In this document: positions 5,607 through 20,154 of the stretch, in pieces
Numbering within the stretch: the first letter of the stretch is position 1
Layout: each line of letters begins with the position of its first letter
IMG/VR virus record: IMGVR_UViG_3300042549_005931
Location: 1-64,000 of that record
DNA: 64,000 nucleotides
Reading direction: 5' to 3' (one strand)
The notes under the pieces: model-generated
Database searches by the model: none
What the model saw: the letters and a program-made list of their open reading frames with translations, nothing else
Told to the model about the DNA's origin: nothing
Made by a program: the position numbers and the translations under genes

Positions 5607-5633
5607 AACAAAAGATTATATAAATATATACAT

Positions 5634-5831: not shown

Positions 5832-5834
5832 TTT

Positions 5835-7190
5835 ATGAAGAAAAAGATATTACTATTATCTGACGACTTAAGGTCAACATCGGGTATTGCTACAATGTCA
5901 AAGGAATTTGTGTTGGGTACGGTGGATAAATACGATTGGGTCCAATTGGGTGCCATGATAAAACATCAAGATATTGGTAAAACCATTGACGTTAGTGAGG
6001 ATGTAAGAAATAAAACGGGGGTAAAAGATGCAAATGTAAAATTATATCCCAATAATGGTTATGGTGATATATTCACATTGAGGAGATTAATTGATATTGA
6101 AAAACCAGACGCCATTCTTCACTTTACAGACCCACACTATTGGCAATGGTTATACGATAATGAACAAGAAATTAGACAAAAATGTCCAATTTTGTTCTAT
6201 CATATATGGGATAATTTGCCTGACCCAAAATACAATAGAGATTATTATGAAAGTTGTGATTGGTTGGGTTGTATTTCCAAACAAACATACGGTATTGTTC
6301 ATCGTGTAGGTAAAATGAATAATGAATCAACATATAAACCATTAGAGGATTGGCAAATAAGTTATGTACCTCACGGTATTAATCAAAATGTTTTCAAACC
6401 AATTAAAAAAGTATCGGAAGATATTAGTAACTTTGTATATGGTGATAAAAAATATGATTTCATTTTGTTCTATAACAATCGAAACATTAGAAGAAAACAA
6501 CCAAGTGATGTAATCGCGTCATATAAATTATTCTGTGATAGTTTACCTAAGGACAAATCAAGTAAGTGTTTGTTATTAATGCACACACAACCAGTTGATG
6601 AGAATGGTACGGATTTAATTGCTGTAAAGAATAGTATATGTCCTGAATATGATGTGAAATTCACTAACTTTAAGTTGGAAGCCGATAAATTAAATGAGTT
6701 ATATAATTTAGTCGATTGTACAATTAATATTGCAAACAACGAGGGGTTTGGATTGGCTACGGCAGAGAGTATTATGACCGGCACACCTATTATTGTTAAT
6801 GTAACCGGTGGATTACAAGACCAATGTGGGTTTGATTTTAGTGCAGATGATTATATTTCAATTGGTTCTTTACATAATAAAGGTGAGAGGTCACAAACAA
6901 AACATGGTGAGTGGGTGATACCTGTATGGTCATCATCACAGAACTTAAATGGTTCAGTACTTACCCCATACATCTATGAAGATAGAGTTAATCTACAGGA
7001 TGTGGCAGACGCTATTAATAAAATGTATGAGTTGGGTAACAAGAAAAGAAAAGCTAATGGACAAAAAGGAAGAGAATGGGCAATTAAAAACCTATCTTCC
7101 AAAGTAATGTGTGATTCAATGTCTGAAGGTATTGATACAGCATTAAAGAACTATAAACCAAAGAGTAAATTTAAATTATACAAATTATAA
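5835..7190 (+). CDS. GT4-like (GT-B) glycosyltransferase
   Basis: VPHGIN, NRNIRRKQ, NEGFGLATAES (ExFG..E) motif. Confidence 0.9.
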   Translation: MKKKILLLSDDLRSTSGIATMSKEFVLGTVDKYDWVQLGAMIKHQDIGKTIDVSEDVRNKTGVKDANVKLYPNNGYGDIFTLRRLIDIEKPDAILHFTDPHYWQWLYDNEQEIRQKCPILFYHIWDNLPDPKYNRDYYESCDWLGCISKQTYGIVHRVGKMNNESTYKPLEDWQISYVPHGINQNVFKPIKKVSEDISNFVYGDKKYDFILFYNNRNIRRKQPSDVIASYKLFCDSLPKDKSSKCLLLMHTQPVDENGTDLIAVKNSICPEYDVKFTNFKLEADKLNELYNLVDCTINIANNEGFGLATAESIMTGTPIIVNVTGGLQDQCGFDFSADDYISIGSLHNKGERSQTKHGEWVIPVWSSSQNLNGSVLTPYIYEDRVNLQDVADAINKMYELGNKKRKANGQKGREWAIKNLSSKVMCDSMSEGIDTALKNYKPKSKFKLYKL

Positions 7191-8437
7191 TGAATAGACC
7201 AATATTATTATTTAGAGGACCGGTTGAAACACGGTCGGGATATGGAAGTCATGCAAGGGATGTGTTAGAATCTTTATATAAAATGGATATGTTCGATATT
7301 AGTATTGATAGTTGTAATTGGGGTGTCACTCCAATGAATGCGTTGGAAGATGGTAATGAATTTCATCAATGGATTAAAGAACACAAAGTTGCATCAATAA
7401 GTGGACAACCTGACATTTATGTGTCGGTTACAATATCAAATGAATTCAGAAGAATTGGTAAATTTAATGTTGGTGTTACTGCAGGCGTTGAGACTACAGT
7501 TGTGGGTAAAGATTTAATTGACGGGTGCAATGAGATGGATTTAATTATTGTTCCATCTACATTTACAAGAGACTCATATTACAACACCGTTTATAATGAA
7601 ACTGAACAATCAACCAATAGATTGATTAAACAATTTAGAGTTAATAAAACTATTGAAGTTTTATTTGAAGGTATTAATACAAACATATATAATGATGTTG
7701 TAGACGAATCTTTTGATTTGGATATTAAAGAGGATTTTGCGTTTCTATTTGTTGGTCATTGGTTAAAAGGTGACCTTGGTCAAGATAGAAAGGATGTGGG
7801 AATGTTAATTAAAACATTTGTTGAAACATATAAAGATGTTGAGGATAAACCCGCATTGGTATTAAAAACATCATCAGGTGCGTTTTCTGTTAAAGATAGA
7901 GAACTAATTGCTCAAAAAATTAAACACATCGTTGGTGGTTCAAATGTACCCGTTTATCTTTTGTATGGTGATTTAAGTGATAATGAGATGAATTCATTAT
8001 ATAATCACCCTAAAATTAAATCTATGATTAGTTTAACCAAGGGTGAAGGTTTTGGTAGACCATTATTGGAATTCTCAATGACCGGTAAACCTATCATTGC
8101 TTCCAATTGGTCGGGACATAAAGATTTTTTACCAATGGATAAGGCTATTATGATTGGTGGTTCATTAAATGATGTTCATGATAGTGCGGTTGATAAGTTC
8201 ATATTAAAGGGTGCCAAATGGTTTACTGCAAACTATGGTGAGGCTGCTTCCATTTTAAAATTGGTGAGGGATGAATATGATACCTTTAAAACAAAGTCAG
8301 AAGAATTAAAAGAGATTAATAGACGTGATTTTAGTTTGGAAATGATGACTAAGAAGTTTGAAACTATCTTGACACCATATATTCAAAGACCTGAACGTGT
8401 TGACCTAAAATTACCGAAGTTAAATAAGATTGGATAA
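7190..8437 (+). CDS. GT4-like (GT-B) glycosyltransferase
   Basis: SGYGSHAR, GEGFGRPLLEF, ASNWSGHKDF. Confidence 0.9.
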   Translation: MNRPILLFRGPVETRSGYGSHARDVLESLYKMDMFDISIDSCNWGVTPMNALEDGNEFHQWIKEHKVASISGQPDIYVSVTISNEFRRIGKFNVGVTAGVETTVVGKDLIDGCNEMDLIIVPSTFTRDSYYNTVYNETEQSTNRLIKQFRVNKTIEVLFEGINTNIYNDVVDESFDLDIKEDFAFLFVGHWLKGDLGQDRKDVGMLIKTFVETYKDVEDKPALVLKTSSGAFSVKDRELIAQKIKHIVGGSNVPVYLLYGDLSDNEMNSLYNHPKIKSMISLTKGEGFGRPLLEFSMTGKPIIASNWSGHKDFLPMDKAIMIGGSLNDVHDSAVDKFILKGAKWFTANYGEAASILKLVRDEYDTFKTKSEELKEINRRDFSLEMMTKKFETILTPYIQRPERVDLKLPKLNKIG

Positions 8438-8685
8438 TGAAAGAATTCAAATTTTTTAAAGAGAACGATACTCGATTATGTTTGGAGAATAGTTTTTTGA
8501 CCTTTCCTTCCCAAATAAGATATGATAACGTTGAGTTTTGTTTTCAATTTGATGATGATGAACCCACCGTTTTTGCAAACGGTACCGAAGAAATTAGTAT
8601 TATAATAGAACCAACGAATGGTGGTAATATCACATTTACTACCAATGATAAACAGTTTACAATATTTGCAAGAGAAAGACAATGA
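8437..8685 (+). CDS. Hypothetical protein starting MKEFKFFK
   Basis: Translationally coupled to neighbours. Confidence 0.6.
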   Translation: MKEFKFFKENDTRLCLENSFLTFPSQIRYDNVEFCFQFDDDEPTVFANGTEEISIIIEPTNGGNITFTTNDKQFTIFARERQ

Positions 8686-9068
8686 GAGAGTTTAAATTTT
8701 TCCGTGGTATTATAAGTCCACGTAAAATAAGAGTTACTTGGTCTCCTGAAATGGAACAAGATTTACAATCACACCATGGTATTGACGTTGAATCTGAATT
8801 AGCTTCATTGTTATCTGAAGAAATTGCTAGAGAAGTTGACAACGAAATATTAAGAAATCTAACAGGAACATTTCCATTTCCATTAACAGGAACCGGAACA
8901 ATAACTACTAATGGTGGTTACGCATTGACGACAACAAACACAGGTACTGCTAATTACACCACATTAACTGCAACAAACATCGCTAATACCAATTATACTA
9001 CAACAGCATCTGATAATTTACGTTACTTAAATCATTATATTAATATGGAGGGAGGTAATCGTGCATAG
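8682..9068 (+). CDS. Small protein containing a T4 Gp23 major-capsid-like fragment
   Basis: RKIRVTWSPEMEQDLQSHHGIDVESELASLLSEEIAREVDNEILRNL resembles the Gp23 core RxLKAxYSxELAQDLxAxHGxDAxAELxxILxxEIxxEINRE. Confidence 0.7.
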   Translation: MREFKFFRGIISPRKIRVTWSPEMEQDLQSHHGIDVESELASLLSEEIAREVDNEILRNLTGTFPFPLTGTGTITTNGGYALTTTNTGTANYTTLTATNIANTNYTTTASDNLRYLNHYINMEGGNRA

Positions 9069-9154
9069 ATGTGATTGGCATATATGGCAACCAGAAGGAT
9101 GGGAATTCTGTTGGAGATGTGAAGAATTAACTAGAGAACATAACAAAAAAAAAT

Positions 9155-9775
9155 ATGAAAATAAGTTTCGCAATAACAGTTTGCAACGAGTTGGAGGAAA
9201 TCAAGAAGTTGGTTCCGTTCTTACTGGAAAACAAGAGAGTTCAGGACGAGATAGTAGTTCTTTATGACAATAAGAATGGTAATCCTGAGGTGTTAGATTT
9301 CTTATTACCTTATAACAAATTACCAAATGTCCAAACATGGAGAGGGTTTGATTTTGAGGATAACTTTGCAGATTGGAAGAACAAACTAAATGAATACTGC
9401 ACAGGAGATTACATCGTTCAAATCGACGCTGATGAAATGATTAGTAAGTACATGATTCAAAATATCAATGTTATTATTGGTATGAATCCTGATGTTGATT
9501 TATATTATCTACCAAGAATTAATACGGTTGATGGTTTAACTCCCGAACATATTGATAAATGGAAGTGGAGTATTGATGAAAAAGGGTGGGTTAATTTTCC
9601 GGATTATCAAGGAAGAGTTTATAAATCTGATTTAAAATGGTCAGGTAAGGTTCATGAAAGTATTATCGGGTCTAAAAAGTATTCACTTTTACCTGAAGAT
9701 TTTGTATATTGCATTCAACATCATAAAACAATTGAACGTCAAGAAAAACAAAATAATTACTATAATACACTATGA
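9155..9775 (+). CDS. GT2-like glycosyltransferase
   Basis: ISFAITVCNE, IDADE (DxD), FPDYQGR, KVHE. Confidence 0.85.
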   Translation: MKISFAITVCNELEEIKKLVPFLLENKRVQDEIVVLYDNKNGNPEVLDFLLPYNKLPNVQTWRGFDFEDNFADWKNKLNEYCTGDYIVQIDADEMISKYMIQNINVIIGMNPDVDLYYLPRINTVDGLTPEHIDKWKWSIDEKGWVNFPDYQGRVYKSDLKWSGKVHESIIGSKKYSLLPEDFVYCIQHHKTIERQEKQNNYYNTL

Positions 9776-10359
9776 GTAAGATAGAATTTATAATCCCAAC
9801 CTATAATCGACCCGATTTATTAATGTGTACAATCAACTCGATTGTTGCACAAAGAAGTGATAAATGGAAAATACATGTAGTTGCCGATTGTCCACCTGAA
9901 GGTACATTAGATAAGATAATGAAATATTTTGAGGGTGATGAGAGGATTAAATTTACAATATTACCCGAAAGATATAATGATTGGGGACATACACCAAGAA
10001 ATTACGGTATGGAACATGCAACGGAAGATTGGGTGGTTATGACAGGTGAGGATAACTATTACGTGCCAGTGTTTGTTGACCATTTTTTAGGTGCAGTTAG
10101 TGGTAAGCGAAATGTTCATTTTGTTTTTTGTAATATGGTACATAATTGGACCAATTTTCAATATTATGCAATTGATTGTTCACCAAAAAAAGATGAAATT
10201 GATATTGGTAATTTTATGGTTAGAAGAAAATTTGGTAATAAAATTAAATTAAATGTAACAAGGGCGGCCGCCGATGGGGAATATGTTGAGGAGTATTTAA
10301 AACAATATCCTATGGGTGTTACTTTAAAAATTAATAAAATATTATACGTACACAATTAA
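9772..10359 (+). CDS. GT2-like glycosyltransferase
   Basis: IIPTYNRP, WGHTPRN, GEDNYY, C-terminal YVHN. Confidence 0.85.
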   Translation: MSKIEFIIPTYNRPDLLMCTINSIVAQRSDKWKIHVVADCPPEGTLDKIMKYFEGDERIKFTILPERYNDWGHTPRNYGMEHATEDWVVMTGEDNYYVPVFVDHFLGAVSGKRNVHFVFCNMVHNWTNFQYYAIDCSPKKDEIDIGNFMVRRKFGNKIKLNVTRAAADGEYVEEYLKQYPMGVTLKINKILYVHN

Positions 10360-10411
10360 TATGATTAAAATTACAGTTACAACTAAATAACTTTTATAAA
10401 AAAAAATTAAA

Positions 10412-11593
10412 ATGAAAAAAGAGATACCGTTATTTAAGGTTTTTATGGCAAACACCGCCGCAGATAAAGTTGCTAAAGTATTAAACAGTGGATTCATCGG
10501 TCAAGGACCTGTTGTAGATGAATTCGAAAATACCCTTAGTCAATATTTTCAACATCCTTACATTTCAACATTAAACGCAGCAACATCTGCCGAACATTTG
10601 GCATTACATTTAATTAAAAAACCATTCACATTCACAAAGGCGGATGGATATGGTATTAGAGAAAATGTTTGGGATGGTATGAAAGATGGTGATGAGGTTT
10701 TGACAACAGCATTAACATGTACAGCAACAAACTGGCCAATACTTGCAAATAACTTCAAGATTAAATGGGTTGATATTGACCCTAAAACTTTGAATATGGA
10801 TTTGGATGATTTGGAAAGAAAAATCGGTCCTAAAACAAGAGCCATTATGGTCGTTCATTGGGGTGGGTATCCGGTAGATTTGGATAGACTTAGACAAATT
10901 CAAGAGAAGTCATTACGTATGTACGGTTTCAAACCAGCAGTTATTGAAGATTGTGCACACGCAATGGGTAGTAAGTATAAAGGTAAATTGATTGGTACAC
11001 ATGGTAACATATGTACATTCTCATTACAGGCAATTAAACACATTACATCAGTTGATGGTGGGTTATTATTCTTACCTCATGAAGAACTAAACAGACGAGC
11101 TCGTTTATTGAGATGGTATGGTATCGATAGAGATTCACCAAGAAAAGATTTTAGATGTGAAGCTGACATTGAAGAGTGGGGTTTTAAATTCCATATGAAT
11201 GATGTTAATGCGGCCATTGGTGTAGAAAATTTCAAACACGTAGATGAAATTGTTGGTAAACATAAATCAAACGCTAAGTACTATGATGATAATTTAAAGT
11301 TTGTATCAGGTGTAACTTTATTAGAAAGAAATCCAGATATGGAAAGTGCCTTTTGGATTTATTCATTATTAGTTGAAAGAAAAGGTGACTTCATGAAATA
11401 TATGAAAGAATGTGGAATTGCTGTTTCACAAGTTCATGAAAGAAATGATATTCATACTTGCGTAAAAGACTATCGTGCGATGTTGCCTAACTTAGATAGA
11501 ACCATCGGTAGTGTTATCTCAATTCCAATTGGTTGGTGGGTAACAGAAGAAGATAGAAAATATATTGTAGATTGTATTAAAAAAGGTTGGTAA
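10412..11593 (+). CDS. DegT/DnrJ/EryC1/StrS PLP-dependent sugar aminotransferase
   Basis: GPVVDEFE, VHWGG, IEDCAHAMG, FSLQAIKHIT (PLP Lys), DGG. Confidence 0.93.
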   Translation: MKKEIPLFKVFMANTAADKVAKVLNSGFIGQGPVVDEFENTLSQYFQHPYISTLNAATSAEHLALHLIKKPFTFTKADGYGIRENVWDGMKDGDEVLTTALTCTATNWPILANNFKIKWVDIDPKTLNMDLDDLERKIGPKTRAIMVVHWGGYPVDLDRLRQIQEKSLRMYGFKPAVIEDCAHAMGSKYKGKLIGTHGNICTFSLQAIKHITSVDGGLLFLPHEELNRRARLLRWYGIDRDSPRKDFRCEADIEEWGFKFHMNDVNAAIGVENFKHVDEIVGKHKSNAKYYDDNLKFVSGVTLLERNPDMESAFWIYSLLVERKGDFMKYMKECGIAVSQVHERNDIHTCVKDYRAMLPNLDRTIGSVISIPIGWWVTEEDRKYIVDCIKKGW

Positions 11594-12558
11594 TGGAGAG
11601 AATAATTGATGACTCGTTTTTAAAATCTGATGTAACGGAGTTTGCATTAGGTTATGATAAAGTTAAGAATCATACTTGGTATGATAACTTAAATTATATG
11701 GTTGATTTATCTAAAAAATATTTCAATGAGGATAACTTCATTATGGATTATTCTTGTGGTACCGGCATTTTTTGTGAGAGATTATTAAAATCTACAATTG
11801 ATTGTCCAAGAATTTTAATGATGGACTCCTCACCAAAATATTTGAAGTTATCTCATGATAAATTCGGTAGAAATTATAAGTTTCATTTTAGGGTTATTAA
11901 CTATCTTAAAAATGAGGGTAGGTTACAAACAATATCCGAAACTTTAGGTGAAGATTATAAAGAACTATTAGATGGGATTGTTTGTACAAACGCAATTCAT
12001 TTATACCCAACAATCGATGATACAATTAAATCTTGGAATGATATTTTAGTTAAGGGTGGTAAATTATTAATAAATTCGGGTAACATATACAACCCATTAA
12101 TGGGTGAAGAAACGAAGTTGATTGACCAGACAGTAGAGGAGATTTCTAAAATGTCATATGACATTGTAAAAGGTGATTCTAAATATTCCAAATATGTTGA
12201 TTTAATTGACAATTTCGACTATATTGAAAAACATAATGTACTTAGAGATAAATACTTTTTACCTATTCGACCGATTAATTTCTACACAGATGAATTAATT
12301 AAAAATGGGTTTAAAATTGTGGAAGTTAAAACTATTGATGTCGATGCTAAAGTTGACGAGTGGTTTGATTTCTTAAAAGTATATCACGAAGGTATTATTG
12401 GTTGGATTGGTGGTTCTAAAAAAATTACCGGTGTTGAACCAAGTGAAGATGAAGTTAATGATAGAGTCGAAATTATAAAATTGGCGCTAACAAAAATGTT
12501 TAATAACCAAAACGATTTTAAAGCGTGTTGGAACTATATAATTTGTGAAAAAATATAA
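11587..12558 (+). CDS. Class I SAM-dependent methyltransferase
   Basis: MDYSCGTG, NAIHL, LVKGGKLLI; likely ATG at 11593. Confidence 0.8.
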   Translation: MVMERIIDDSFLKSDVTEFALGYDKVKNHTWYDNLNYMVDLSKKYFNEDNFIMDYSCGTGIFCERLLKSTIDCPRILMMDSSPKYLKLSHDKFGRNYKFHFRVINYLKNEGRLQTISETLGEDYKELLDGIVCTNAIHLYPTIDDTIKSWNDILVKGGKLLINSGNIYNPLMGEETKLIDQTVEEISKMSYDIVKGDSKYSKYVDLIDNFDYIEKHNVLRDKYFLPIRPINFYTDELIKNGFKIVEVKTIDVDAKVDEWFDFLKVYHEGIIGWIGGSKKITGVEPSEDEVNDRVEIIKLALTKMFNNQNDFKACWNYIICEKI

Positions 12559-13237
12559 AAACATTATGAATCATTGGGATGAGTATTGGGTTAACGTTAA
12601 ATGGAGTCCTTTATTAAAAAATCCGTCTCCTAAGATGTATGGTGGAACAAATTACGAACCATTAGCAACTATTGGTATGACCGCATTTCTTGATGCGGTT
12701 AAAGATAAATTTGTAGAAAATTTTTCAATATTAGATTATGGTTGTGGTGCAGGTATATTGATTAATCCAATAAGTGAAAGACTTGCTAATTTTACATATT
12801 ATGGGTTAGAACCAATAAATGGGGATGGTCCATCAAGAATAGAATTGGGTAAAGAATCTTTTAATGATTCAAGAGTAAAATTTGGATTCATTGAAAGTGA
12901 TTATGATGATGTAATTAAAAATAAATTAGATTGTGTAATTTTAATATCAATTTTTACACATTTAACAATTGAGGACATTTATTTAACGTTAGACAAATTA
13001 ATTAAAGTTTTTGAGGTTAGTCCTAATTCCTCCATTGTTTTTTCTTGTTTTATTTCGAATAAGAGAGTATTGGTAAACCATCTCCCAAATATATGGGAAA
13101 GATTTTACGGTGAAAGTCATATAATGATAGATGATTTAGTAACATATTGCAATAAAAATAATTTAAAATTAATTAAACATATGGATTTTATCGCAGCCGG
13201 GGGATATAATCATCAAATATTTAAAATCGAAAAATAA
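12545..13237 (+). CDS. Class I SAM-dependent methyltransferase
   Basis: ILDYGCGAG, SIFTHL. Confidence 0.85.
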   Translation: MKKYKNIMNHWDEYWVNVKWSPLLKNPSPKMYGGTNYEPLATIGMTAFLDAVKDKFVENFSILDYGCGAGILINPISERLANFTYYGLEPINGDGPSRIELGKESFNDSRVKFGFIESDYDDVIKNKLDCVILISIFTHLTIEDIYLTLDKLIKVFEVSPNSSIVFSCFISNKRVLVNHLPNIWERFYGESHIMIDDLVTYCNKNNLKLIKHMDFIAAGGYNHQIFKIEK

Positions 13238-13803
13238 TGGTAGGTTGGAACGAAGAAATTAAAAAAGAATTGGGTTACTGTGGTGACAATGTCTTTATAG
13301 GTCATAATGTTGTTTTTACCAATCCTAAAAATGTTATATTAGGTGATAACGTTAGAATTGACCCGTTTTGTTTGATAACAACGGCATTAGAAGTTGATAA
13401 ATATACTCAAATATGTTCACACGCAGTTTTAGGTGGTGGAGTACAACATAAAATTACATTAGGTAAATGGAATTTTATTGGTTATGGGTCTAAATTATTT
13501 TGTGCATCCGAAGATTATAGCGGTGAGTTTGGTCCCGTAAATGAATATTGGGGTAACAATAAAATTTTTAGAGGTGATATCACTTTTAAAGACTATTCAG
13601 GAATCGCGTCCGATGTAATGGTTTTACCGGGTGTCACATTTCCCGAAGGTTGTACTATTGGTGCTAAAAGTTTTGTTTATTCAAAATCGAAACTAAATGA
13701 ATGGTCAATTTATTTGGGTAACCCATTAGTATTTCATAAAGAAAGAAATAAAGATAATGTGATTAGTTTATCTAATGACCCAAATTTCCTTAAGAATAAA
13801 TGA
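13237..13803 (+). CDS. Left-handed beta-helix sugar acyltransferase (VioB-like)
   Basis: Hexapeptide repeats GDNVFIG/GDNVRID, ASEDYSG, VLPGVT..IGAKS..GNP. Confidence 0.85.
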   Translation: MVGWNEEIKKELGYCGDNVFIGHNVVFTNPKNVILGDNVRIDPFCLITTALEVDKYTQICSHAVLGGGVQHKITLGKWNFIGYGSKLFCASEDYSGEFGPVNEYWGNNKIFRGDITFKDYSGIASDVMVLPGVTFPEGCTIGAKSFVYSKSKLNEWSIYLGNPLVFHKERNKDNVISLSNDPNFLKNK

Positions 13804-14531
13804 GTAAGTGTTTAAAAATAATATGTTGTTACTTGGGTCGGAGGAATGGTACACACAATACTCCTACCAATATTTTACCATTTATTAATCAATCAATAGA
13901 AAATGAAATTGAAATTGAAAATGGTTTTGATACTGATGTTATTTTTGTTGTAAATGAAAGCTCAAACATGAGTGGATTTGAATGTATTTTGGAACAAAAT
14001 GGTAAACAAACAAAAAACGGTAAGATAATAATAGAAACAAGACCCAATATAAATGGTTCATTTGGTGCATATTATGATATGTTTAGAAAATACATAAATG
14101 CTTACGATTATTTCTTTTTTTGTGAAGATGATGTTTTAATATATAAAGAAAATTATATTAAGGATTTTATTGAATTTTGTGATAGTGACGATTCTGTTGG
14201 ATTTGTATCTTTAGCCCCTATACACGATGGTAAAAATTATGCTATACATTCAGGAGGTGGTTGTGGTCTTACAAGTAAAGAAAAATTTTTATCCGCAAAT
14301 ACAATGAATGAAATTGATAATTTTAATAATAACGGTATTAATGTTCCGTATTCAAATTTACTTTTAATGGAAGTTTCATTTACAAATAAATTCGTAATAT
14401 GTGGATTATCGTTAAAAAATCACCCTAAATTTAATCCATTATGTGATAATTATGAAAAACATATTGGTCATAGAAACAATTTTAAACCCGAATATTTGGG
14501 TTTAGAATTTATATACAAAGTTGGAAATTAA
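13800..14531 (+). CDS. Putative GT-A fold glycosyltransferase-like protein
   Basis: RPNINGSFGAY, YFFFCEDD. Confidence 0.5.
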   Translation: MSKCLKIICCYLGRRNGTHNTPTNILPFINQSIENEIEIENGFDTDVIFVVNESSNMSGFECILEQNGKQTKNGKIIIETRPNINGSFGAYYDMFRKYINAYDYFFFCEDDVLIYKENYIKDFIEFCDSDDSVGFVSLAPIHDGKNYAIHSGGGCGLTSKEKFLSANTMNEIDNFNNNGINVPYSNLLLMEVSFTNKFVICGLSLKNHPKFNPLCDNYEKHIGHRNNFKPEYLGLEFIYKVGN

Positions 14532-14545
14532 AAATATTTAATATT

Positions 14546-15427
14546 ATGAGAAATTTTAAACAGAATCATAAGGAAATGAATTGGCCGTGGGTTGAGTCCC
14601 CCTTCTTCAATGAATTAATTAAACATCAAGAATTAACTAATGAACAAAGAGATTTAGCCATAAAATTAAATAAAGATGGATATGTCATTTTAGATTTAGG
14701 TTTAACCGATGAACAAATTGATGCGTTTAAAACTGAGATTGATACCTTAAATGATAGAGATACTGTCGTTACTCAAGCCGATGGATATCATTATTCAAAA
14801 GGTAAGAGAATATTCGAGGGTTGGAAAGATAGTGAGATGTTACAATCTCTTTCTTTAAATCCTGTGGTTATGGATGCATTAAGATTACTTTACAAGAGAG
14901 AACCATATCCATTTCAAACAATTACATTTAATTATGGTTCTAATCAACCATTACATAGTGACTTAATTCACTTCGATTCAATACCACACAGATGGTTAAC
15001 CGCGGTATGGGTGGCGTTAGAAGATATGACCAACCAGAATGGTTCATTGTTATATGTTCCAGGTTCCCATAAACTACCCATATTTGACTTCTACGACCTT
15101 AAAGTTAAAGTTCCTGAGTATGGTAAACAATTTGATAGTTATGCAGAATATGAGGAGTTTATTAGACAACTGGTGGAAGTACAAGAATTAGAAGTAAAAC
15201 CATTAATATGTAAGAAGGGTCAAGCACTTGTTTGGTCTGCCAATTTAATACATGGTGGTGACATTATCAGAGACCCGAATAGTACACGTTATTCACAAGT
15301 AACCCATTACTATTACGACGATTGTGAAGTTTACTATTCACCTATGTTCTCAGAATCATGGAAGGGTGACTTCAAAACAAAAGATTTAACCGGTAAAAAT
15401 ATTAGAGAATTTAAACATACAAAATAA
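14546..15427 (+). CDS. PhyH-family 2OG-Fe(II) dioxygenase
   Basis: HSD (HxD), WVALED..NGSLLYVPGSH, HGG, R.SQVTHY. Confidence 0.9.
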   Translation: MRNFKQNHKEMNWPWVESPFFNELIKHQELTNEQRDLAIKLNKDGYVILDLGLTDEQIDAFKTEIDTLNDRDTVVTQADGYHYSKGKRIFEGWKDSEMLQSLSLNPVVMDALRLLYKREPYPFQTITFNYGSNQPLHSDLIHFDSIPHRWLTAVWVALEDMTNQNGSLLYVPGSHKLPIFDFYDLKVKVPEYGKQFDSYAEYEEFIRQLVEVQELEVKPLICKKGQALVWSANLIHGGDIIRDPNSTRYSQVTHYYYDDCEVYYSPMFSESWKGDFKTKDLTGKNIREFKHTK

Positions 15428-16356
15428 TGAGTGTAAAAATAGTTGGGATTGGAGCGTATGTTCCTGAAAAAAAATTAACAAATAAAGATATTGAAAAAAT
15501 GGTCGATACTGATGACCAATGGATTCAAGATAATTTAGGGATTAGGGAAAGAAGAATTAGTGATGATAATCAGTTAAGTTCTGATTTAGCAGTTAAATCA
15601 AGTATATCGGCTATTCATGATGCAAATTTAACTGTTAATGATATTGACTTTATAATCTTGGCAACCTCTTCACCAGATAGGATTAGTCCATCGACGGCCT
15701 GTTTATTACAAGAAAAAATTGGAGCCGTTAATGCCGCCTGTGTTGATATTAATGCAGTTTGTCCGGGATTTTTATATGGTTTACAAATTGCTAAAGGGTT
15801 ATTATCAATTGGTCAATATAAGAACATATTACTTGTTGCATCGGAAACTTATTCTAAATTAACTGATTGGTCAAGACGTGATTGTGTATTCTTTGGTGAT
15901 GGTTCGGGTGCTGTGGTTCTTCAAAGAGATGAAACAAATTATTGTGAAATTGATTTATATGCGGATGGTACCGGAAAAGAAGCGTTTACTGTTCATCACA
16001 ATGAATATTTTTCAATGATTGGTAAAGAGATTTATAAAGGTGGAACCACTAAATTACCATCGTCAATACAATCATTGTTAGAAAGAACCGGTGTTGATAA
16101 AAATGATATCACACATGTGGTACCACATCAACCAAGTATTAATATTTTAAAGAAAACTGCGGAGATATTAGACGTTGATTTTTCTAAATTTGCATTATCA
16201 ATGGGTGAATATGCAAACACCGCAGGTGCATCTATCCCAATTACACTTAACAAACTTTACGAACAAAACAAATTAAAGAAAAATGATTTATTACTACTAA
16301 CAACAATAGGTTCTGGTTGGGTTTGGGGTAGTGGATTGATTAAATGGACAAAATAA
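15427..16356 (+). CDS. fabH: 3-oxoacyl-ACP synthase III
   Basis: GIRERR, AVCPGFLY (Cys), FGDG, PHQPS (His), ANTAGAS (Asn) catalytic triad. Confidence 0.93.
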   Translation: MSVKIVGIGAYVPEKKLTNKDIEKMVDTDDQWIQDNLGIRERRISDDNQLSSDLAVKSSISAIHDANLTVNDIDFIILATSSPDRISPSTACLLQEKIGAVNAACVDINAVCPGFLYGLQIAKGLLSIGQYKNILLVASETYSKLTDWSRRDCVFFGDGSGAVVLQRDETNYCEIDLYADGTGKEAFTVHHNEYFSMIGKEIYKGGTTKLPSSIQSLLERTGVDKNDITHVVPHQPSINILKKTAEILDVDFSKFALSMGEYANTAGASIPITLNKLYEQNKLKKNDLLLLTTIGSGWVWGSGLIKWTK

Positions 16357-17000
16357 TGAAAAAGATATTACTGGTTGGTGGTACTGGAGGGTTGGGAAAT
16401 CAATTAACTGAACATTTAAGTTTAAGTTATACATGTTTTTCTGTCGGGTCTAAGATGTTAGACGTTACTAATGAAGAACAAGTAAAAGAATTTTTAGATG
16501 AAAACGATTATGATATTATCATTTATCTTTCAGTAAAGAATATCGATGGTTTAATACACAAACAAACAAAAGAAACAACTGAATCCCAATTAAATGTAAA
16601 TCTATTTGGATTCTTAAATGTTCTTCGTCATTCTACGAATAAACTTAGAGAAAAAGGTTATGGTAGAATCATATACATATCATCTGTATTATCTAAGAAA
16701 CCAATTAGAGGTACCGGTATTTATTCAGCGAGTAAAGCATTTTGTGATAATATAATTAAAACATATTCATTAGAAAATTCAAAGTATGGAATTACATCCA
16801 ATTCTATTCAATTAGGATATTTTGAAGGTGGTTTAACTGATAAAGTTCCCATAGACATTTTACAAAATGTAAAAAATAGTATATCTTTAAAAAGATTAGG
16901 TAAAGTAGAAGAAATGTCTAACTTAATTAAAACAATAATAGAGACTGAATATATTAACGGTACAAATATTTCGATTACAGGTGGTTATGAAAATGAATAA
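16344..17000 (+). CDS. SDR oxidoreductase (FabG-like)
   Basis: GGTGGLG, ISS, YSASK, NGTNISITGG. Confidence 0.85.
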   Translation: MDKIMKKILLVGGTGGLGNQLTEHLSLSYTCFSVGSKMLDVTNEEQVKEFLDENDYDIIIYLSVKNIDGLIHKQTKETTESQLNVNLFGFLNVLRHSTNKLREKGYGRIIYISSVLSKKPIRGTGIYSASKAFCDNIIKTYSLENSKYGITSNSIQLGYFEGGLTDKVPIDILQNVKNSISLKRLGKVEEMSNLIKTIIETEYINGTNISITGGYENE

Positions 17001-17724
17001 ATTTTTAATTATTTTGGCATATTATGAAAGGTCAAAAATTGTGCAAAATGCATTAAATTCTATATTGGATATATCATATCCAGAATTTGAGGTTCATTTT
17101 ATTGATGATGGGTCAACAACTAAAGGAGAACCGATTGTTAGAGAAATGTGTTCATCCATAATTGATAAATTTACATTTCATTATATTGACAACACCGTAG
17201 AACAAAAAAAAGCTCAGGGTGGTAGTATACATGGACAATATCTTAACCTTGCAATAGAACAAAGCGATGCTGACCATGTTATTATTTTGTGTGATGATGA
17301 TGCAATATTTCCACATTTCTTAACCAAACTAAATATTTTTTTAAATAAAACAGAAAACTTAGATAAAAAATATTTTTATCACAATATTCTTACATACAAT
17401 TCAATTATAGAACCATATACTGTGGGTGTTGAAAGGATGGATATGAGTTATCATACAAATCATCACACACAACCAATTCATTGTTCTTGTCAGGTGGATT
17501 CAACACAAGTTACTTATTCACGTAAATTTTTTATGGATGATGGTTTAAAATATCCATCACCACAAACATCGATGTTGGATTTAGTCATTTATAGACAAAT
17601 GTTTAATGCTTGGGGTCCGGCTTATTATAGTGGATTAATTTCACAAGTTAAATCTAATAATGAAGATAATTTAATTTTTAAGGATAAAACAGATAAAATG
17701 TTTATTACAAATGACATGAAATAA
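16981..17724 (+). CDS. GT2-like glycosyltransferase
   Basis: FIDDGS, LCDDD; likely ATG near 16993. Confidence 0.8.
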   Translation: MVMKMNKFLIILAYYERSKIVQNALNSILDISYPEFEVHFIDDGSTTKGEPIVREMCSSIIDKFTFHYIDNTVEQKKAQGGSIHGQYLNLAIEQSDADHVIILCDDDAIFPHFLTKLNIFLNKTENLDKKYFYHNILTYNSIIEPYTVGVERMDMSYHTNHHTQPIHCSCQVDSTQVTYSRKFFMDDGLKYPSPQTSMLDLVIYRQMFNAWGPAYYSGLISQVKSNNEDNLIFKDKTDKMFITNDMK

Positions 17725-17823
17725 AAAAACTTTTAGTACCGGTGTAAATCTTTGTAAAAAAATAAAAGAAGAAGAGTGTCTTGTAATAAGTGTTAAAACC
17801 TACATTAAAAATTATTTAAGTAA

Positions 17824-18927
17824 ATGAATATAACATTAGTATTGGCTGTTTACAATAACCTATCATTAACCAAAGAATGTTATAGACACATTCGTGGTTT
17901 GTATAATGATGCACCAATTGTTATTAGTAGTGGTGGGTCCGATGATGGTACATTCGAATGGTTAGAACAAACATCTGAGAATGATACACATTTTTCTTTT
18001 GTTCACGAATCTGAAAAGATAAACTTCTCGGAAAATTATAACCAAGGAATTAAACTTGTCGATACAGATAAGTTAGTTCTTATTCATAATGATATGGTTA
18101 TCGGTAAGGGTTTCTTAGAATCACTTGACAAACAACTAACTGAGAACATGTTATTATGTTACACCACTGTTGAACCACCAATCTTTAAAGGTCATAATAG
18201 ACCGGGTAAGTTCATATTGGATTGTGGAACATCATTCAATAACTTCAATATGAATTTGTTCAACCAATATATTGATAGTGTACCAAAAACTGGTAATCTA
18301 TATGATGGTGGTTCATTCTTTATGTCAGGATACAAATCATTATTTGAAGATGTAAACTATTTCGACGGGTTTAGTTTCTTTCCTTGTTTTTGTGAGGATG
18401 ATGACTTCTTAATAAGAACTAAACTTAAAGGTTACGACATCAAGACAACCGAAGAAGCAATAACGTATCATTTCGTTTCTAAGACCTCCAGATTTAGTGA
18501 TGAGTACAAAGACACCACAAAACAAAATGAACTCAACAGCAACCGAAATTTCATACGAAAATGGGGTATTCCATCTCATTTATTTACCATGATTAGGTAT
18601 TGGGAGGATGATGACTTCAAATATAAGAATTATGATATGGGTTTAACATTAGTAAACTCATCTCAATTAGAAATATTGGAACCATTTTTTGATAAGATAT
18701 CAATTGATAAGGTACCAGAAGATTACATAGTTTCCGAACAGAAAAAAACTAATTATGATTTAAGAAGTAAATTCACATTCATAGATAATGTTGATGTAAT
18801 GATTTACATTGATGGTAATATTTCTGAGATTGAGTTTGATGTTATTCAAAAACTAAGATTAAGTTTACCGGATTACGAACCGGGTATATACGAGAGTGGT
18901 AGATTAAAGATTGAGATTAAATCCTAA
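17824..18927 (+). CDS. GT2-like glycosyltransferase with C-terminal extension
   Basis: GSDDGT, IHNDM, CEDDDF, YHFVSKTSR. Confidence 0.85.
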   Translation: MNITLVLAVYNNLSLTKECYRHIRGLYNDAPIVISSGGSDDGTFEWLEQTSENDTHFSFVHESEKINFSENYNQGIKLVDTDKLVLIHNDMVIGKGFLESLDKQLTENMLLCYTTVEPPIFKGHNRPGKFILDCGTSFNNFNMNLFNQYIDSVPKTGNLYDGGSFFMSGYKSLFEDVNYFDGFSFFPCFCEDDDFLIRTKLKGYDIKTTEEAITYHFVSKTSRFSDEYKDTTKQNELNSNRNFIRKWGIPSHLFTMIRYWEDDDFKYKNYDMGLTLVNSSQLEILEPFFDKISIDKVPEDYIVSEQKKTNYDLRSKFTFIDNVDVMIYIDGNISEIEFDVIQKLRLSLPDYEPGIYESGRLKIEIKS

Positions 18928-19323
18928 TTTTTTAAATACGTTAATTGATTTTTTATTCCATTCATCAACGAATGATTTGACCGGTCCATTTGTGTGATTT
19001 TTAATCACAAGATATAACATATCTGTTGCACCGTAGTTTCTTTCACCGACATGTTGTTTAGAGAACACATTGTATATAACATCATCATCTAACCAGCAAT
19101 ACCCATAAATCTTTTTTTCATGATATGCAACAAAGAATTTATGACCATTTAAAATTCTGTCTTGTGCATCATCTAAATTAAACATTAAGTCCCAATTAAG
19201 TTCATTGTTAAACATCTTTATACAATGTTTAATAATTTGGTAGTCATATGTTTCTTGGATTTCAATTTCTTCTGATATATTTCTATCAATTAAATCATTT
19301 GAATTAAGAATATAATTAATCAT
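18904..19323 (-). CDS. GNAT-like acetyltransferase
   Basis: IYGYCW, YNVFS, VDEWNKKSINVFKKLGF (motif B N..S..F.KLGF). Confidence 0.65.
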   Translation of the reverse strand: MINYILNSNDLIDRNISEEIEIQETYDYQIIKHCIKMFNNELNWDLMFNLDDAQDRILNGHKFFVAYHEKKIYGYCWLDDDVIYNVFSKQHVGERNYGATDMLYLVIKNHTNGPVKSFVDEWNKKSINVFKKLGFNLNL

Positions 19324-20027: not shown

Positions 20028-20042
20028 TGAATAAATTTATAT

Positions 20043-20135: not shown

Positions 20136-20154
20136 TATATTTTTTATTTAATAA

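What the first reader, a model, noticed from the sequence alone, without database searches (positions are those of the whole stretch)
10412..17000. Phage-encoded N-acyl amino-sugar module including FabH and a FabG-like SDR
A DegT aminotransferase, two methyltransferases, an LbH acyltransferase, a PhyH hydroxylase, a FabH with intact Cys-His-Asn triad and an SDR are co-transcribed among GT2 genes. This parallels pathways for 4-(3-hydroxyacylamido)-4,6-dideoxy-O-methyl sugars, such as the modified viosamine of Pseudomonas syringae flagellin glycans and the anthrose on BclA collagen. FabH here is probably not a fatty-acid auxiliary gene; it more likely builds the short acyl group. No ACP or 4,6-dehydratase gene is in the window, so these must come from the host or elsewhere in the genome.
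Basis: partly seen in the sequence, partly recalled or inferred. Interest (0 to 1): 0.62.

Follow-up and report, generated by a model that had tools for sequence, protein, structure and literature searches.

The report
Phage module for acylated amino sugar
A freshwater jumbo phage carries a bacterial-style gene set, including a FabH-like condensing enzyme and its partner reductase, that most likely builds a hydroxy-acylated, methylated amino sugar to decorate the virus particle rather than to make fatty acids.

Summary
GT4 and GT2 genes flank them. The contig is a 269-kb T4-like jumbo phage from lake water.

The FabH and SDR do not group with housekeeping enzymes. They belong to a clade of FabH-SDR gene pairs that sit in bacterial polysaccharide clusters (SH-aLRT 98; AU test p 1.4e-7 against a housekeeping affinity). 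DegT, LbH, PhyH, FabH and SDR travel together in about 30 viral contigs down to 45-50% FabH identity.

One amendment. Neither the phage nor the bacterial pairs have an ACP gene, and four of six basic residues recalled as the E. coli FabH ACP-docking site are lost. The LbH and SDR also resemble CoA-using enzymes. I infer a CoA-based, ACP-independent route to a 3-hydroxyacyl donor.

The exact sugar (4,6-dideoxyhexose or pentose) and the acceptor are not shown. The neighbouring collagen-like tail fibre and a capsid-protein fragment gene point to the virion.

This is a new variant of a known kind. Interest is moderate.

The parts
5835..7190 (+). GT4-type glycosyltransferase, first gene of the + strand island
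   Evidence: PF00534 1.5e-7. Homologs at 72-74% identity lie at the same place in relatives L006-L013.
7190..8437 (+). Second GT4-type glycosyltransferase
   Evidence: PF00534 6.5e-5, below the cut-off. Conserved in relatives at 63-83% identity.
8437..8685 (+). 82-aa ORF of unknown function, conserved in the island; not an ACP
   Evidence: No Pfam or PHROG family. Homologs at 43-76% identity in relatives. The PF00550 search of the contig found nothing.
8682..9068 (+). 128-aa ORF made of a fragment of the major capsid protein plus a Thr/Asn/Gly-rich tail
   Evidence: PF07068 Gp23 5.5e-16. Residues 11-60 are 58% identical to residues 339-388 of the phage's own 574-aa capsid protein. The N-terminal 60 aa are conserved at the same island position in relatives, 40-49% identity.
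9155..9775 (+). GT2 glycosyltransferase
   Evidence: PF00535 7.5e-6.
9772..10359 (+). GT2 glycosyltransferase
   Evidence: PF00535 8e-17.
10412..11593 (+). DegT-family PLP sugar aminotransferase; makes the sugar 4-amine (position inferred)
   Evidence: PF01041 2e-72. Solved relatives AtmS13 (4zwv, 4xau) and CalS13 (4zas) at 1e-121 and 3e-113. Lys209.
11587..12558 (+). Class I SAM-dependent methyltransferase 1 (probable true start at 11593)
   Evidence: Weak Pfam methyltransferase hits. The Atlas model matches methyltransferase clusters at TM 0.96, and the Atlas holds the protein from residue 3 on.
12545..13237 (+). Probable SAM methyltransferase 2; absent from the closest relatives
   Evidence: Methyltransf_25 1.7e-5, below the cut-off. 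46-50% identical homologs in L020/L132/L133. Absent from L006-L013.
13237..13803 (+). AntD-like left-handed beta-helix N-acyltransferase
   Evidence: Hexapep 1e-14. Best solved relatives are 3vbi/3vbk/3vbn (AntD of B. cereus) at 1e-18 over residues 6-186.
13800..14531 (+). 243-aa GT-A-fold protein (glycosyl- or nucleotidyl-transferase-like); present in only some relatives
   Evidence: No Pfam, NCBIfam or PDB sequence hit. Conserved FFCEDD motif. AF2 model pLDDT 72.6. Foldseek hits to GT-A glycosyltransferases and sugar nucleotidyltransferases at TM 0.35-0.5.
14546..15427 (+). PhyH-family Fe(II)/2-oxoglutarate dioxygenase
   Evidence: PF05721 5.6e-22. Best solved hit is human phytanoyl-CoA dioxygenase, 2e-6. 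H137-x-D139 and H236 are present.
15427..16356 (+). KAS III (FabH-like) condensing enzyme of the SDR-paired, polysaccharide-cluster clade
   Evidence: TIGR00747 310 bits, above the cut-off. Triad C112/H234/N264. Tree and AU test.
16344..17000 (+). Short (218 aa) classical-SDR ketoreductase paired with the FabH
   Evidence: adh_short 3.7e-20. Best solved hits are acetoacetyl-CoA reductases 4kms and 4k6c. Its best genomic matches are FabH-adjacent SDRs.
16981..17724 (+). GT2 glycosyltransferase that travels with the module
   Evidence: PF00535 1.5e-11. 70-81% identical in relatives and 76% in the distant phage L015, directly after the SDR.
17824..18927 (+). GT2 glycosyltransferase, last + strand gene of the island
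   Evidence: PF00535 8.6e-11.
50838..53966 (-). Collagen-like tail fibre, candidate acceptor of the glycan (inferred, not shown)
   Evidence: PF01391 Collagen 4e-109 plus Peptidase_S74. PHROG tail fibre e-169. About 790 aa of G-X-Y triplets rich in GPT, GNT and GAT.

Best explanation
The region is the sugar-tailoring core of a large phage glycosylation island.

Proposed steps:
1. The DegT enzyme transaminates a host-supplied NDP-4-keto sugar to an NDP-4-amino-4-deoxy sugar. This is either a 4,6-dideoxyhexose of the viosamine type or a 4-aminopentose.
2. The FabH-like KAS III condenses acetyl-CoA with a malonyl thioester, probably malonyl-CoA rather than malonyl-ACP, to give an acetoacetyl thioester.
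3. The paired SDR reduces this to a 3-hydroxybutyryl thioester. A longer chain is possible, because the primer pocket is enlarged.
4. The PhyH-family dioxygenase adds a further hydroxyl, on the acyl-CoA or on the finished sugar.
5. The AntD-like LbH enzyme transfers the acyl group to the 4-amine.
6. The two SAM methyltransferases O- or N-methylate the product.
7. The flanking GT2, GT4 and GT-A enzymes build the glycan directly on an acceptor in the infected cell. The most likely acceptor is a virion protein: the collagen-like tail fibre and/or the capsid.

Shown here: gene content, intact catalytic motifs, phylogenetic placement, conserved synteny, and the absence of ACP, PPTase, dehydratase and lipid-carrier priming genes from the contig.

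Inferred: substrates, order of steps, CoA versus ACP, product structure and acceptor.
For: - Family assignments and motifs.
- The LbH's only strong solved relative is AntD, which binds CoA and dTDP.
- The SDR's best solved relatives are acetoacetyl-CoA reductases.
- The DegT is 1e-121 to the sugar 4-aminotransferases AtmS13 and CalS13.
- Module conservation: DegT-LbH-PhyH-FabH-SDR-GT2 recurs in a 319-kb phage contig at 63% FabH identity. It also recurs, together with RmlC-like and dehydratase-like genes, in a 40-kb phage contig at 55%. In all, 30 IMG/VR contigs carry the FabH, 26 of them with an SDR detected next to it (3 of the other 4 loci end at or near the FabH gene), and most of those with enough upstream flank carry GT4/GT2 homologs.
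- Phylogeny: the phage FabHs form one clade (SH-aLRT 97). It is sister to 79 bacterial SDR-paired FabHs, and the union (SH-aLRT 98) excludes plsX-linked FabHs. The AU test rejects a housekeeping affinity (dlnL 210, p 1.4e-7).
- The bacterial pairs sit in polysaccharide clusters. Pedobacter: Wzx-DegT-WbqC-GNAT-FabH-SDR-GT2. Cloacimonadales: GT4-PIG-L deacetylase-FabH-SDR-LbH-epimerase-Bac_transf.
- The SDR co-segregates with the FabH.
- No ACP or PPTase gene in the phage, in four related viral contigs, or near the pair in five bacterial genomes.
- The basic E. coli residues R36, R151, K214, R249 and K257, which I recall as the ACP-docking site, are conserved 7 of 7 in plsX-linked FabHs. In the window protein these positions read N, R, K, N, I, and K256 reads E.
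- Published precedents for FAS-like modules that build N-acyl groups on 4-amino sugars: PMC3927599 and PMC6519341.
- For a virion acceptor: no Und-P priming transferase in the contig. The island is contiguous with tail-fibre genes, including a Thr-rich collagen-like fibre and six P4H-type oxygenases. A conserved capsid-protein fragment gene lies among the GTs.
Against: - There is no biochemical, transcript or glycan data of any kind. No RNA run holds the stretch.
- The contig is estimated to be 81% complete, so an ACP or dehydratase gene could lie in the missing part. The near-identical 297-kb relative could not be searched.
- The docking-residue argument is soft. R151 and K214 are kept in the window protein, and R249 is basic in 12 of 29 phage-clade members and 52 of 79 bacterial ones. 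Use of host AcpP is therefore not excluded.
- The window lacks the extended-SDR gene that a 96%-identical relative carries after the last GT2. The keto-sugar precursor must come from the host.
- The sugar's identity is open. The aminotransferase's nearest solved relatives are assigned to pentose pathways.
- The acceptor rests on gene neighbourhood only.
- The bacterial FabH sample was drawn with patterns taken from the phage clade, and the AU groups were named after the tree had been seen.
Confidence: 0.6

Rival explanations
1. Same sugar chemistry but a different target. The island remodels the host's surface polysaccharide (LPS O-antigen or capsule) during infection, for example to block superinfection or to release progeny, rather than decorating the virion.
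For: The nearest bacterial relatives of the FabH-SDR pair lie in O-antigen or capsule-type clusters that carry Wzx or Bac_transf. GT2 and GT4 enzymes are typical of such clusters.
Against: The 269-kb contig has no Bac_transf or WecA/MraY-type priming transferase. The 5.8-42 kb island has no Pfam match to a flippase or polymerase family, although several of its ORFs match no family at all. The island adjoins tail-fibre genes and contains a capsid-fragment gene. The phage could still feed a host pathway with the NDP-sugar.
Confidence: 0.17
2. The pathway is ACP-dependent as in the Pseudomonas and Flavobacterium precedents. The FabH and SDR work on the host's housekeeping AcpP, and the LbH transfers the acyl group from acyl-ACP in the manner of LpxA and LpxD. 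This is a sub-variant of the best explanation.
For: The known analogous islands encode an ACP. The FabH scores above the NCBIfam fabH cut-off. R151 and K214 are kept, and part of the clade keeps a basic residue at position 249. The LbH gives weak hits to LpxA and LpxD.
Against: No ACP gene accompanies any of the roughly 110 phage or bacterial pairs examined. R36, R249, K256 and K257 are replaced in the window protein. The closest solved relatives of the LbH and SDR use CoA thioesters.
Confidence: 0.25
3. The glycan is attached to phage DNA as a base hypermodification that protects against restriction.
For: In the most distant phage relatives (L017, L018) the DegT-SDR-LbH-FabH set lies among nucleotide-metabolism genes: a ThyA-like gene, DNMK and RNA ligase. 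In the window a ThyA-family gene (1901-3073) and a DNA methylase (4663-5373) lie just upstream of the island. Phage GTs that hypermodify DNA are known (cited in PMC12619734).
Against: The ThyA-family protein scores 304-308 bits against the thymidylate synthase model across its full length, which I take to favour an ordinary ThyA; hydroxymethylase profiles were not compared. I did not look for, and did not see, a base-hydroxymethylation or kinase pathway. An island with about 20 GT and tailoring genes, P4H-type oxygenases and LamG-fused GT7 enzymes next to fibre genes fits protein glycosylation better.
Confidence: 0.08
4. The FabH and SDR are auxiliary metabolic genes that boost host fatty-acid synthesis during infection.
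For: An annotation pipeline would name them FabH and FabG. The FabH passes the NCBIfam fabH subfamily cut-off.
Against: The tree and AU test place the FabH outside the plsX-linked housekeeping FabHs. The SDR scores far below every FabG cut-off, and its best matches are the paired SDRs. The gene order with DegT, LbH and PhyH is conserved across divergent phages. Pocket and docking residues differ from the housekeeping type.
Confidence: 0.03

Closest known systems
Viosamine island of Pseudomonas syringae pv. tabaci (vioA, vioM, vioT, vioS, vioB, vioR, acp) and the orfA-N flagellin glycosylation island of P. aeruginosa PAK (PMC3927599)
   Same: The enzyme classes match: a DegT aminotransferase, a methyltransferase, a KAS III, a 3-oxoacyl reductase, an LbH acyltransferase and a glycosyltransferase. 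Together they give a 4-(3-hydroxybutanamido)-4,6-dideoxy-O-methyl sugar that is put directly on a surface protein.
   Different: The phage set has no acp gene. It adds a PhyH dioxygenase, a second methyltransferase and a GT-A-fold ORF. Its LbH is AntD-like. It is carried by a phage. Direct sequence comparison with VioS and VioR was not possible with these tools.
Anthrose pathway of Bacillus anthracis/cereus (antABCD; the AntD N-acyltransferase, PDB 3vbi-3vbp), whose product decorates the collagen-like protein BclA
   Same: The phage LbH's best solved relative is AntD, at full length and 1e-18. As I recall, AntD transfers a short 3-hydroxyacyl group from CoA to dTDP-4-amino-4,6-dideoxyglucose. 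A Thr-rich collagen-like fibre is encoded nearby. The BclA acceptor is also recalled from memory.
   Different: In anthrose biosynthesis the acyl-CoA comes from leucine catabolism and an enoyl-CoA hydratase (from memory), not from a KAS III and ketoreductase pair. Identity to AntD is only moderate. The acceptor in the phage is not shown.
Flavobacterium psychrophilum O-polysaccharide genes wfpC-wfpG (PMC6519341)
   Same: In the likely host phylum, ketoacyl synthases, a ketoreductase and an LbH (PglD-like) acyltransferase are proposed to build a 3,5-dihydroxyhexanoyl group on the 4-amine of a 4-amino-4,6-dideoxy sugar.
   Different: That cluster encodes its own ACP (wfpD) and two ketosynthases, and it works on a lipid-linked O-antigen.
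ACP-less FabH-SDR gene pairs in bacterial polysaccharide clusters (79 loci, mostly Bacteroidota, Cloacimonadota and Ignavibacteriota; I found no paper that describes them)
   Same: This is the sister clade of the phage FabHs. It shares the immediate FabH-SDR adjacency, the lack of an ACP gene, the replaced docking residues and the small residue at pocket position 87.
   Different: FabH identity to the window protein is 37-52%. The partner acyltransferases vary (GNAT, other LbH types). Where I looked, the clusters carry Wzx or priming transferases.
Virus-encoded glycosylation: mycobacteriophage virion glycosylation (Freeman et al. 2023, cited in PMC12619734) and the Mimivirus viosamine pathway (recalled from memory)
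   Same: In both, a virus encodes its own glycosyltransferases or amino-sugar enzymes to decorate capsid, tail or fibrils.
   Different: As far as I recall, neither includes a KAS III and ketoreductase acyl-building unit. GenBank phage records hold no FabH more than 38% identical to this one.

Membership tests
KAS III / FabH (thiolase-fold condensing enzyme) | Cys-His-Asn catalytic triad and both ACP_syn_III domains | tested here: met
   C112/H234/N264 align with E. coli C112/H244/N274 and are invariant in all 115 aligned rows. PF08545 2.6e-23 and PF08541 7.4e-27. TIGR00747 310 bits against a cut-off of 292.
Housekeeping fatty-acid FabH | Groups in a tree with plsX/fabD/fabG/acpP-linked FabHs | tested here: not met
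   Identity to plsX-linked paralogs is 34-37%, against 45-52% to SDR-paired ones. A branch with SH-aLRT 98 separates them. The AU test rejects the joint clade, p 1.4e-7.
Housekeeping fatty-acid FabH | Basic ACP-docking residues (E. coli R36, R151, K214, R249, K256, K257; the list is from memory, the residue identities were checked) | tested here: not met
   The window protein reads N, R, K, N, E, I at these positions. plsX-linked FabHs keep R36, R151, K214 and R249, and a basic residue at 257, in 7 of 7.
FabG (3-oxoacyl-ACP reductase) equivalog | Score above the curated NCBIfam cut-offs; full-length classical SDR of about 245 aa | tested here: not met
   The best scores are about 100 bits against cut-offs of 222-300. 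The protein has 218 aa and alignments start near residue 35-45. The housekeeping fabG of a bacterial genome scores 46 bits, against 62-110 bits for the paired SDRs.
Classical SDR ketoreductase | Rossmann glycine motif and the catalytic Ser...Tyr-x3-Lys | tested here: met
   GGTGGLG at residues 12-18, Ser113/114, and Y127-x3-K131.
AntD-type LbH sugar N-acyltransferase | Full-length homology to AntD; use of a short hydroxyacyl-CoA donor on an NDP-4-amino sugar | tested here: inconclusive
   Homology is met: 1e-18 over residues 6-186, and the next solved hits are at 1e-6 or weaker. Donor and acceptor specificity cannot be read from the sequence.
DegT/DnrJ/EryC1 sugar aminotransferase | PLP-binding lysine and the family fold | tested here: met
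   PF01041 2e-72. Lys209 in SLQAIKH aligns with the corresponding Lys of AtmS13. It scores below the cut-off of every NCBIfam equivalog (best is PseC, 207 against 423), so the substrate is unassigned.
PhyH Fe(II)/2-oxoglutarate dioxygenase | His-x-Asp...His iron triad | tested here: met
   H137-S-D139 and H236 align with human PhyH. PF05721 79.5 bits against a cut-off of 22.
Viosamine-island-type module (DegT + LbH + KAS III + ketoreductase + methyltransferase + GT + ACP) | All seven components encoded together | tested here: not met
   Six of the seven are present. No ACP or PPTase gene is found in the 269-kb contig or in four related viral contigs.
Viosamine-island-type module | The product is an N-(3-hydroxyacyl)-4-amino-4,6-dideoxy-O-methyl hexose on a protein | not testable with these tools
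   This needs glycan mass spectrometry or NMR, or enzyme reconstitution.

The most novel reading that the evidence does not exclude
The FabH-SDR pair defines an ACP-independent, CoA-based 'mini-FAS' that supplies hydroxyacyl groups for amino sugars. It would be widespread but undescribed in bacterial polysaccharide clusters and captured by freshwater jumbo phages. The phage would use it, together with six P4H-type oxygenases and about 15 glycosyltransferases, to coat its collagen-like tail fibres and capsid with a BclA/anthrose-like glycan nap that is swapped cassette-wise between relatives, in the way O-antigens vary.
Probability: 0.3. Interest if true: 0.75.

Novelty: new variant of a known kind. 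Interest (0 to 1): 0.55.

Why it matters
1. Annotation. Pipelines would label these two genes as fatty-acid auxiliary metabolic genes. The evidence says they are glycan-tailoring enzymes, so counts of viral 'lipid metabolism' genes need this caveat.

2. Phage biology. The result extends phage-encoded glycosylation from simple GT pairs, as in mycobacteriophages, to a full tailoring pathway for a rare sugar. The phage lineage recurs in lake metagenomes from about ten studies. Glycan-coated fibres or capsids could affect host recognition, stickiness, grazing or enzyme resistance.

3. Enzymology. The work singles out a large clade of KAS III and ketoreductase pairs without an ACP, in both bacteria and phages. 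Their chemistry (primer, extender, chain length) can be tested directly with purified proteins.

4. Evolution. The cassette-level mosaicism suggests diversifying selection on the glycan. Methyltransferase 2, the GT-A ORF and an extended SDR come and go among relatives at 96-97% FabH identity. FabH-SDR pairs of only 50% identity sit in islands whose DegT is 86-94% identical.

Tried and rejected
- The promoter and terminator scan of 5000-20500 gave counts at chance level and says nothing about the operon structure.
- DNA-level search of GenBank phages found only the DegT gene of Flavobacterium phage immuto, at 67% identity. That phage has a syntenic GT-GT-x-GT2-DegT island but no FabH.
- Protein-level search of GenBank phages found no FabH above 38% identity. 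The hits are unannotated short 'phage' records of Listeria, Staphylococcus and similar, which look like host DNA.
- PDB sequence searches found nothing for methyltransferase 1 or the 243-aa ORF, and only one marginal hit for methyltransferase 2.
- The Atlas feature search gave no named family for the 243-aa ORF. The fold search placed it in the GT-A / nucleotidyltransferase fold only loosely, at TM 0.35-0.5.
- The 128-aa capsid-fragment ORF is not similar to the gene at the same position in phage immuto.
- My crude phmmer screen for DegT, GT or Wzx genes around the 80 bacterial FabH loci flagged only 30. Pfam annotation of one unflagged locus (L024) showed a clear polysaccharide cluster, so the screen undercounts. 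Only two bacterial loci were annotated in full.
- The 297-kb near-identical relative (L011) is not held and could not be searched for ACP or dehydratase genes.
- No RNA run holds the stretch.
- The large representative search, the complex prediction and two of the three word-index protein searches were not used, because the family scans and loci answered the questions.
- No genetic code other than table 11 was used. No contig that looked human was met.
- The idea that the 82-aa ORF is a hidden ACP was rejected.

Full report
**What is there**

- DegT aminotransferase, 10412-11593.
- Methyltransferase 1, 11587-12558.
- Methyltransferase 2, 12545-13237.
- Hexapeptide LbH transferase, 13237-13803.
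- An unannotated 243-aa ORF, 13800-14531.
- PhyH dioxygenase, 14546-15427.
- FabH, 15427-16356.
- A 218-aa SDR, 16344-17000.

Two GT2 genes follow (16981, 17824). Upstream lie two GT2 genes (9155, 9772), a 128-aa and an 82-aa ORF, and two GT4 genes (5835, 7190).

Inside 10412-17000 the genes overlap or are at most 14 bp apart. This supports one operon but does not prove it. The promoter and terminator scan was at chance level, and no RNA data exist.

The catalytic motifs are intact.
- FabH: C112/H234/N264.
- DegT: Lys209.
- PhyH: H137-x-D139...H236.
- SDR: GGTGGLG and Y127-x3-K131.

Methyltransferase 1 is a class I SAM methyltransferase by structure (TM 0.96). The 243-aa ORF has a conserved FFCEDD motif and a GT-A-like fold.

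**Whose genome**

The window is the first 64 kb of a single 269,133-bp IMG/VR virus record that CheckV rates 81% complete.
- It has a T4-type Gp23 capsid gene at about 174.5-176.2 kb and tail-fibre genes in the window.
- G+C is about 30% throughout, the module included.
- The nearest isolated phage is Flavobacterium phage immuto, which has a syntenic GT-rich island but no FabH.
- The module's DNA recurs in lake-water metagenomes from about ten studies.
- It may belong to, or lie near, the freshwater 'moraphage' lineage, for which Flavobacteriia hosts are predicted (PMC12619734). I did not test this.

**Is the FabH a fatty-acid gene?**

- A word-index search found a continuous series of homologs from 97% down to 50% identity.
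- The genome scan returned 80 bacterial loci at 37-52% identity.
- In nearly all of these loci an SDR gene starts at the FabH stop codon.
- In five of the genomes the SDR-paired FabH is 48-50% identical to the phage enzyme. The plsX-linked paralogs are only 34-37% identical; one of them sits in an rpmF-plsX-fabH-fabD-fabG row.
- In the maximum-likelihood tree (124 rows, LG+C20) the phage-context FabHs form one clade (SH-aLRT 97). It is sister to the 79 bacterial paired FabHs. The union (SH-aLRT 98) excludes the plsX-linked FabHs, E. coli's included.
- Forcing the phage clade together with the housekeeping FabHs costs 210 log-likelihood units (AU p 1.4e-7).
- The phage SDR behaves the same way. 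Its best match in each of the five genomes is the FabH-adjacent SDR (62-110 bits), well above the housekeeping fabG (46 bits).

Two bacterial loci were annotated in full, and both are polysaccharide clusters.
- Pedobacter: Wzx-DegT-WbqC-x-GNAT-FabH-SDR-GT2.
- Cloacimonadales: GT4-ATP-grasp-GT4-DUF354-PIG-L deacetylase-FabH-SDR-LbH-UDP-GlcNAc 2-epimerase-Bac_transf.

Caveats: the bacterial sample was drawn with peptide patterns from the phage clade, only two loci were fully annotated, and the AU groups were named after the tree had been seen.

**Is it one module?**

The genes travel together.
- A 319-kb phage contig whose FabH is 63% identical has DegT-LbH-PhyH-FabH-SDR-GT2 with no methyltransferases.
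- A 40-kb phage contig at 55% has RmlC-like, dehydratase-like and RmlD-like genes, then DegT, the 243-aa homolog, LbH, a methyltransferase, PhyH, FabH, SDR and a GT.
- Contigs at 50% have methyltransferase-DegT-SDR-LbH-FabH.
- A profile scan found 30 IMG/VR contigs. An SDR was detected next to the FabH in 26 of them; three of the other four loci end at or near the FabH gene, and the fourth (L148) has an LbH gene in the SDR's place. Most loci with enough upstream flank carry homologs of the window's GT4 or GT2 genes.

Composition varies among near-identical relatives.
- Methyltransferase 2 is unique to the window.
- The 243-aa ORF is present in some relatives and absent from others.
- A relative at 96% FabH identity carries an extra extended-SDR gene after the last GT2, which the window lacks.
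- Some islands share a DegT at 86-94% identity but carry a FabH-SDR pair of only 50% identity.

This is the cassette-swapping pattern familiar from O-antigen loci.

**What the enzymes resemble**

- The LbH's only strong solved relative is AntD of Bacillus cereus (1e-18, full length; the next hits are about 1e-6). AntD is the anthrose N-acyltransferase and binds CoA and dTDP.
- The SDR's best solved relatives are acetoacetyl-CoA reductases, followed by FabGs.
- The DegT is 1e-121 to AtmS13 and CalS13. AtmS13 is postulated to aminate C-4 of a TDP-4-keto-pentose (PMC10951976).
- The PhyH's best solved hit is human phytanoyl-CoA dioxygenase, an acyl-CoA hydroxylase.

The gene set equals the P. syringae viosamine island (vioA, M, T, S, B, R plus acp), which makes 4-(3-hydroxybutanamido)-4,6-dideoxy-2-O-methylglucose on flagellin (PMC3927599). 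It also parallels the F. psychrophilum wfpC-G genes proposed to make a 3,5-dihydroxyhexanoyl amide (PMC6519341). Both precedents encode an ACP.

**The missing ACP**

The contig has no match to any of these families:
- PP-binding (ACP) or PPTase;
- GDP_Man_Dehyd or Polysacc_synt_2;
- NTP_transferase.

The only Epimerase-family hit is the 218-aa SDR itself.

No ACP gene is seen in four related viral contigs. None lies near the pair in five bacterial genomes; the closest is 20 kb away beside a different KAS III. An E. coli AcpP search of all loci also found none.

I aligned the FabHs to E. coli numbering. The six basic residues I recall as the ACP-docking site do carry the recalled residue identities in E. 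coli.
- R36, R151, K214, R249 and a basic residue at 257 are conserved 7 of 7 in plsX-linked FabHs.
- The window protein reads N, R, K, N at the first four, E at 256 and I at 257.
- In the phage clade, position 249 is N in 15, R in 7, K in 5 and H in 2 of 29.
- In the bacterial pairs R36 is N in 57 of 79, K214 is mostly acidic or amide, and K257 is mostly Ile.
- The primer-pocket residue F87 is Ser in all phage members and Ala in 75 of 79 bacterial ones. F304 becomes Ile or Val.

Together with the CoA-using relatives of the LbH, SDR and PhyH, this leads me to infer a CoA-based route: acetyl-CoA plus malonyl-CoA gives acetoacetyl-CoA, then 3-hydroxybutyryl-CoA or a longer chain. Use of host AcpP is not excluded; I put it at about one in four.

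**The precursor sugar**

The window does not supply a 4-keto sugar, so the host must, or a part of the genome not on the contig.
- Relatives carry 4,6-dehydratase-family genes within 3 kb of the FabH or within the cassette. This favours a 6-deoxyhexose in the family at large.
- The window's DegT subtype and a UDP-glucose dehydrogenase at 26187-27332 keep a 4-aminopentose route open.

I leave this unresolved.

**The acceptor**

This is inference from neighbourhood.
- The module is part of a glycan island of about 36 kb (5.8-42 kb). On the - strand the island also holds a carbamoyltransferase, UDP-glucose dehydrogenase, a radical-SAM enzyme, two GT7-LamG fusions, an APS-kinase-like protein and more GT2 genes.
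- The island runs without a break into six tandem P4H-type 2OG oxygenases (40951-45161), two flavin 'halogenase'-like genes, a 1042-aa collagen-like tail fibre and further fibre genes.
- The fibre has about 790 residues of G-X-Y triplets rich in GPT, GNT and GAT, and a C-terminal S74 chaperone domain.
- The contig has no lipid-carrier priming transferase. This favours direct glycosylation of a soluble acceptor.
- A 128-aa ORF among the GTs carries a 50-residue copy of the phage's own capsid protein (58% identity) followed by a Thr/Asn/Gly-rich tail. Its N-terminal part is conserved at the same position in relatives.

These features point to the virion: fibre, capsid or both. Remodelling of a host polysaccharide and DNA hypermodification remain possible, at roughly 0.17 and 0.08. 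For DNA, the only hints are nearby nucleotide-metabolism genes, and the ThyA-family protein scores highly and at full length against the thymidylate synthase model.

**Novelty**

The chemistry has bacterial precedents. What differs here:
- the carrier is a phage, and no GenBank phage has a FabH above 38% identity;
- there is no ACP, and the docking surface is altered;
- a PhyH dioxygenase has been added;
- the LbH is AntD-like.

My literature searches found no description of a phage FabH in a glycan module. I rate it a new variant of a known kind.

Read laying, the large representative search and complex prediction were not used. Only table 11 was used.

Noticed in passing
window 50838-53966 (-): A 1042-aa collagen-like tail fibre. 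It has about 790 aa of G-X-Y triplets (GPQ, GNQ, GNT, GPT, GAT) and a C-terminal Peptidase_S74 chaperone domain. It causes the 47% G+C spike at 52-54 kb. With Thr in the Y position it resembles BclA-type O-glycosylated collagen.
   Followed up: partly
window 40951-45161 (-): Six tandem paralogous P4H-type 2OG-Fe(II) oxygenase genes (PF13640; 168-215 aa each) lie between the glycan genes and the collagen-like fibre. This suggests hydroxylation of the fibre. A DUF6445 protein lies nearby at 38442-39359.
   Followed up: partly
window 8682-9068 (+): A 128-aa ORF whose residues 11-60 copy residues 339-388 of the phage's own capsid protein (58% identity), followed by a Thr/Asn/Gly-rich tail. The N-terminal part is conserved at the same island position in relatives (40-49% identity). 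It could be a capsid-docking or acceptor mini-protein. Function unknown.
   Followed up: partly
window 45688-47310 (-) and 48910-50445 (-): Two flavin-dependent 'tryptophan halogenase'-like genes (phrog_2928, e-107 and e-111) lie beside the collagen-like fibre, together with a Gly_rich_2 protein at 47865-48860.
   Followed up: no
window 20155-38445 (-): The - strand half of the glycan island: a carbamoyltransferase (22074-23744), UDP-glucose dehydrogenase (26187-27332), a radical-SAM protein (29502-30884), two GT7 (beta-4-GalT-like) enzymes fused to LamG domains (30881-33672), an APS-kinase-like P-loop protein (36198-36653), a 599-aa GT2, and several ORFs with no family.
   Followed up: partly
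window 1901-3073 (-) and 4663-5373 (-): A 390-aa thymidylate-synthase-family protein (308 bits, with inserts relative to the 266-position model) and a DNA methylase lie just upstream of the island. Similarly long ThyA-like genes sit near the module in distant relatives (L017, L018).
   Followed up: partly
L135, L137, L138, L144 (IMG/VR contigs): These islands share a DegT at 86-94% identity and GT4/GT2 genes at 60-85% identity with the window, but carry a FabH-SDR pair of only 50% identity. No AntD-like LbH was detected by tblastn. This indicates cassette replacement inside an otherwise conserved island.
   Followed up: partly
L147 (IMGVR_UViG_GVMAG-S-ERX555964-61_000001, 141 kb): A contig labelled as a giant-virus MAG also carries PhyH, LbH, SDR, FabH (45% identity) and DegT together. 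Whether the label is right was not checked.
   Followed up: no
L024 (Cloacimonadales chromosome) 7314-10509: A bacterial variant of the module in which a PIG-L-type de-N-acetylase, rather than a DegT, precedes FabH-SDR-LbH. This suggests that an N-acetyl group on a sugar is swapped for a hydroxyacyl group.
   Followed up: no
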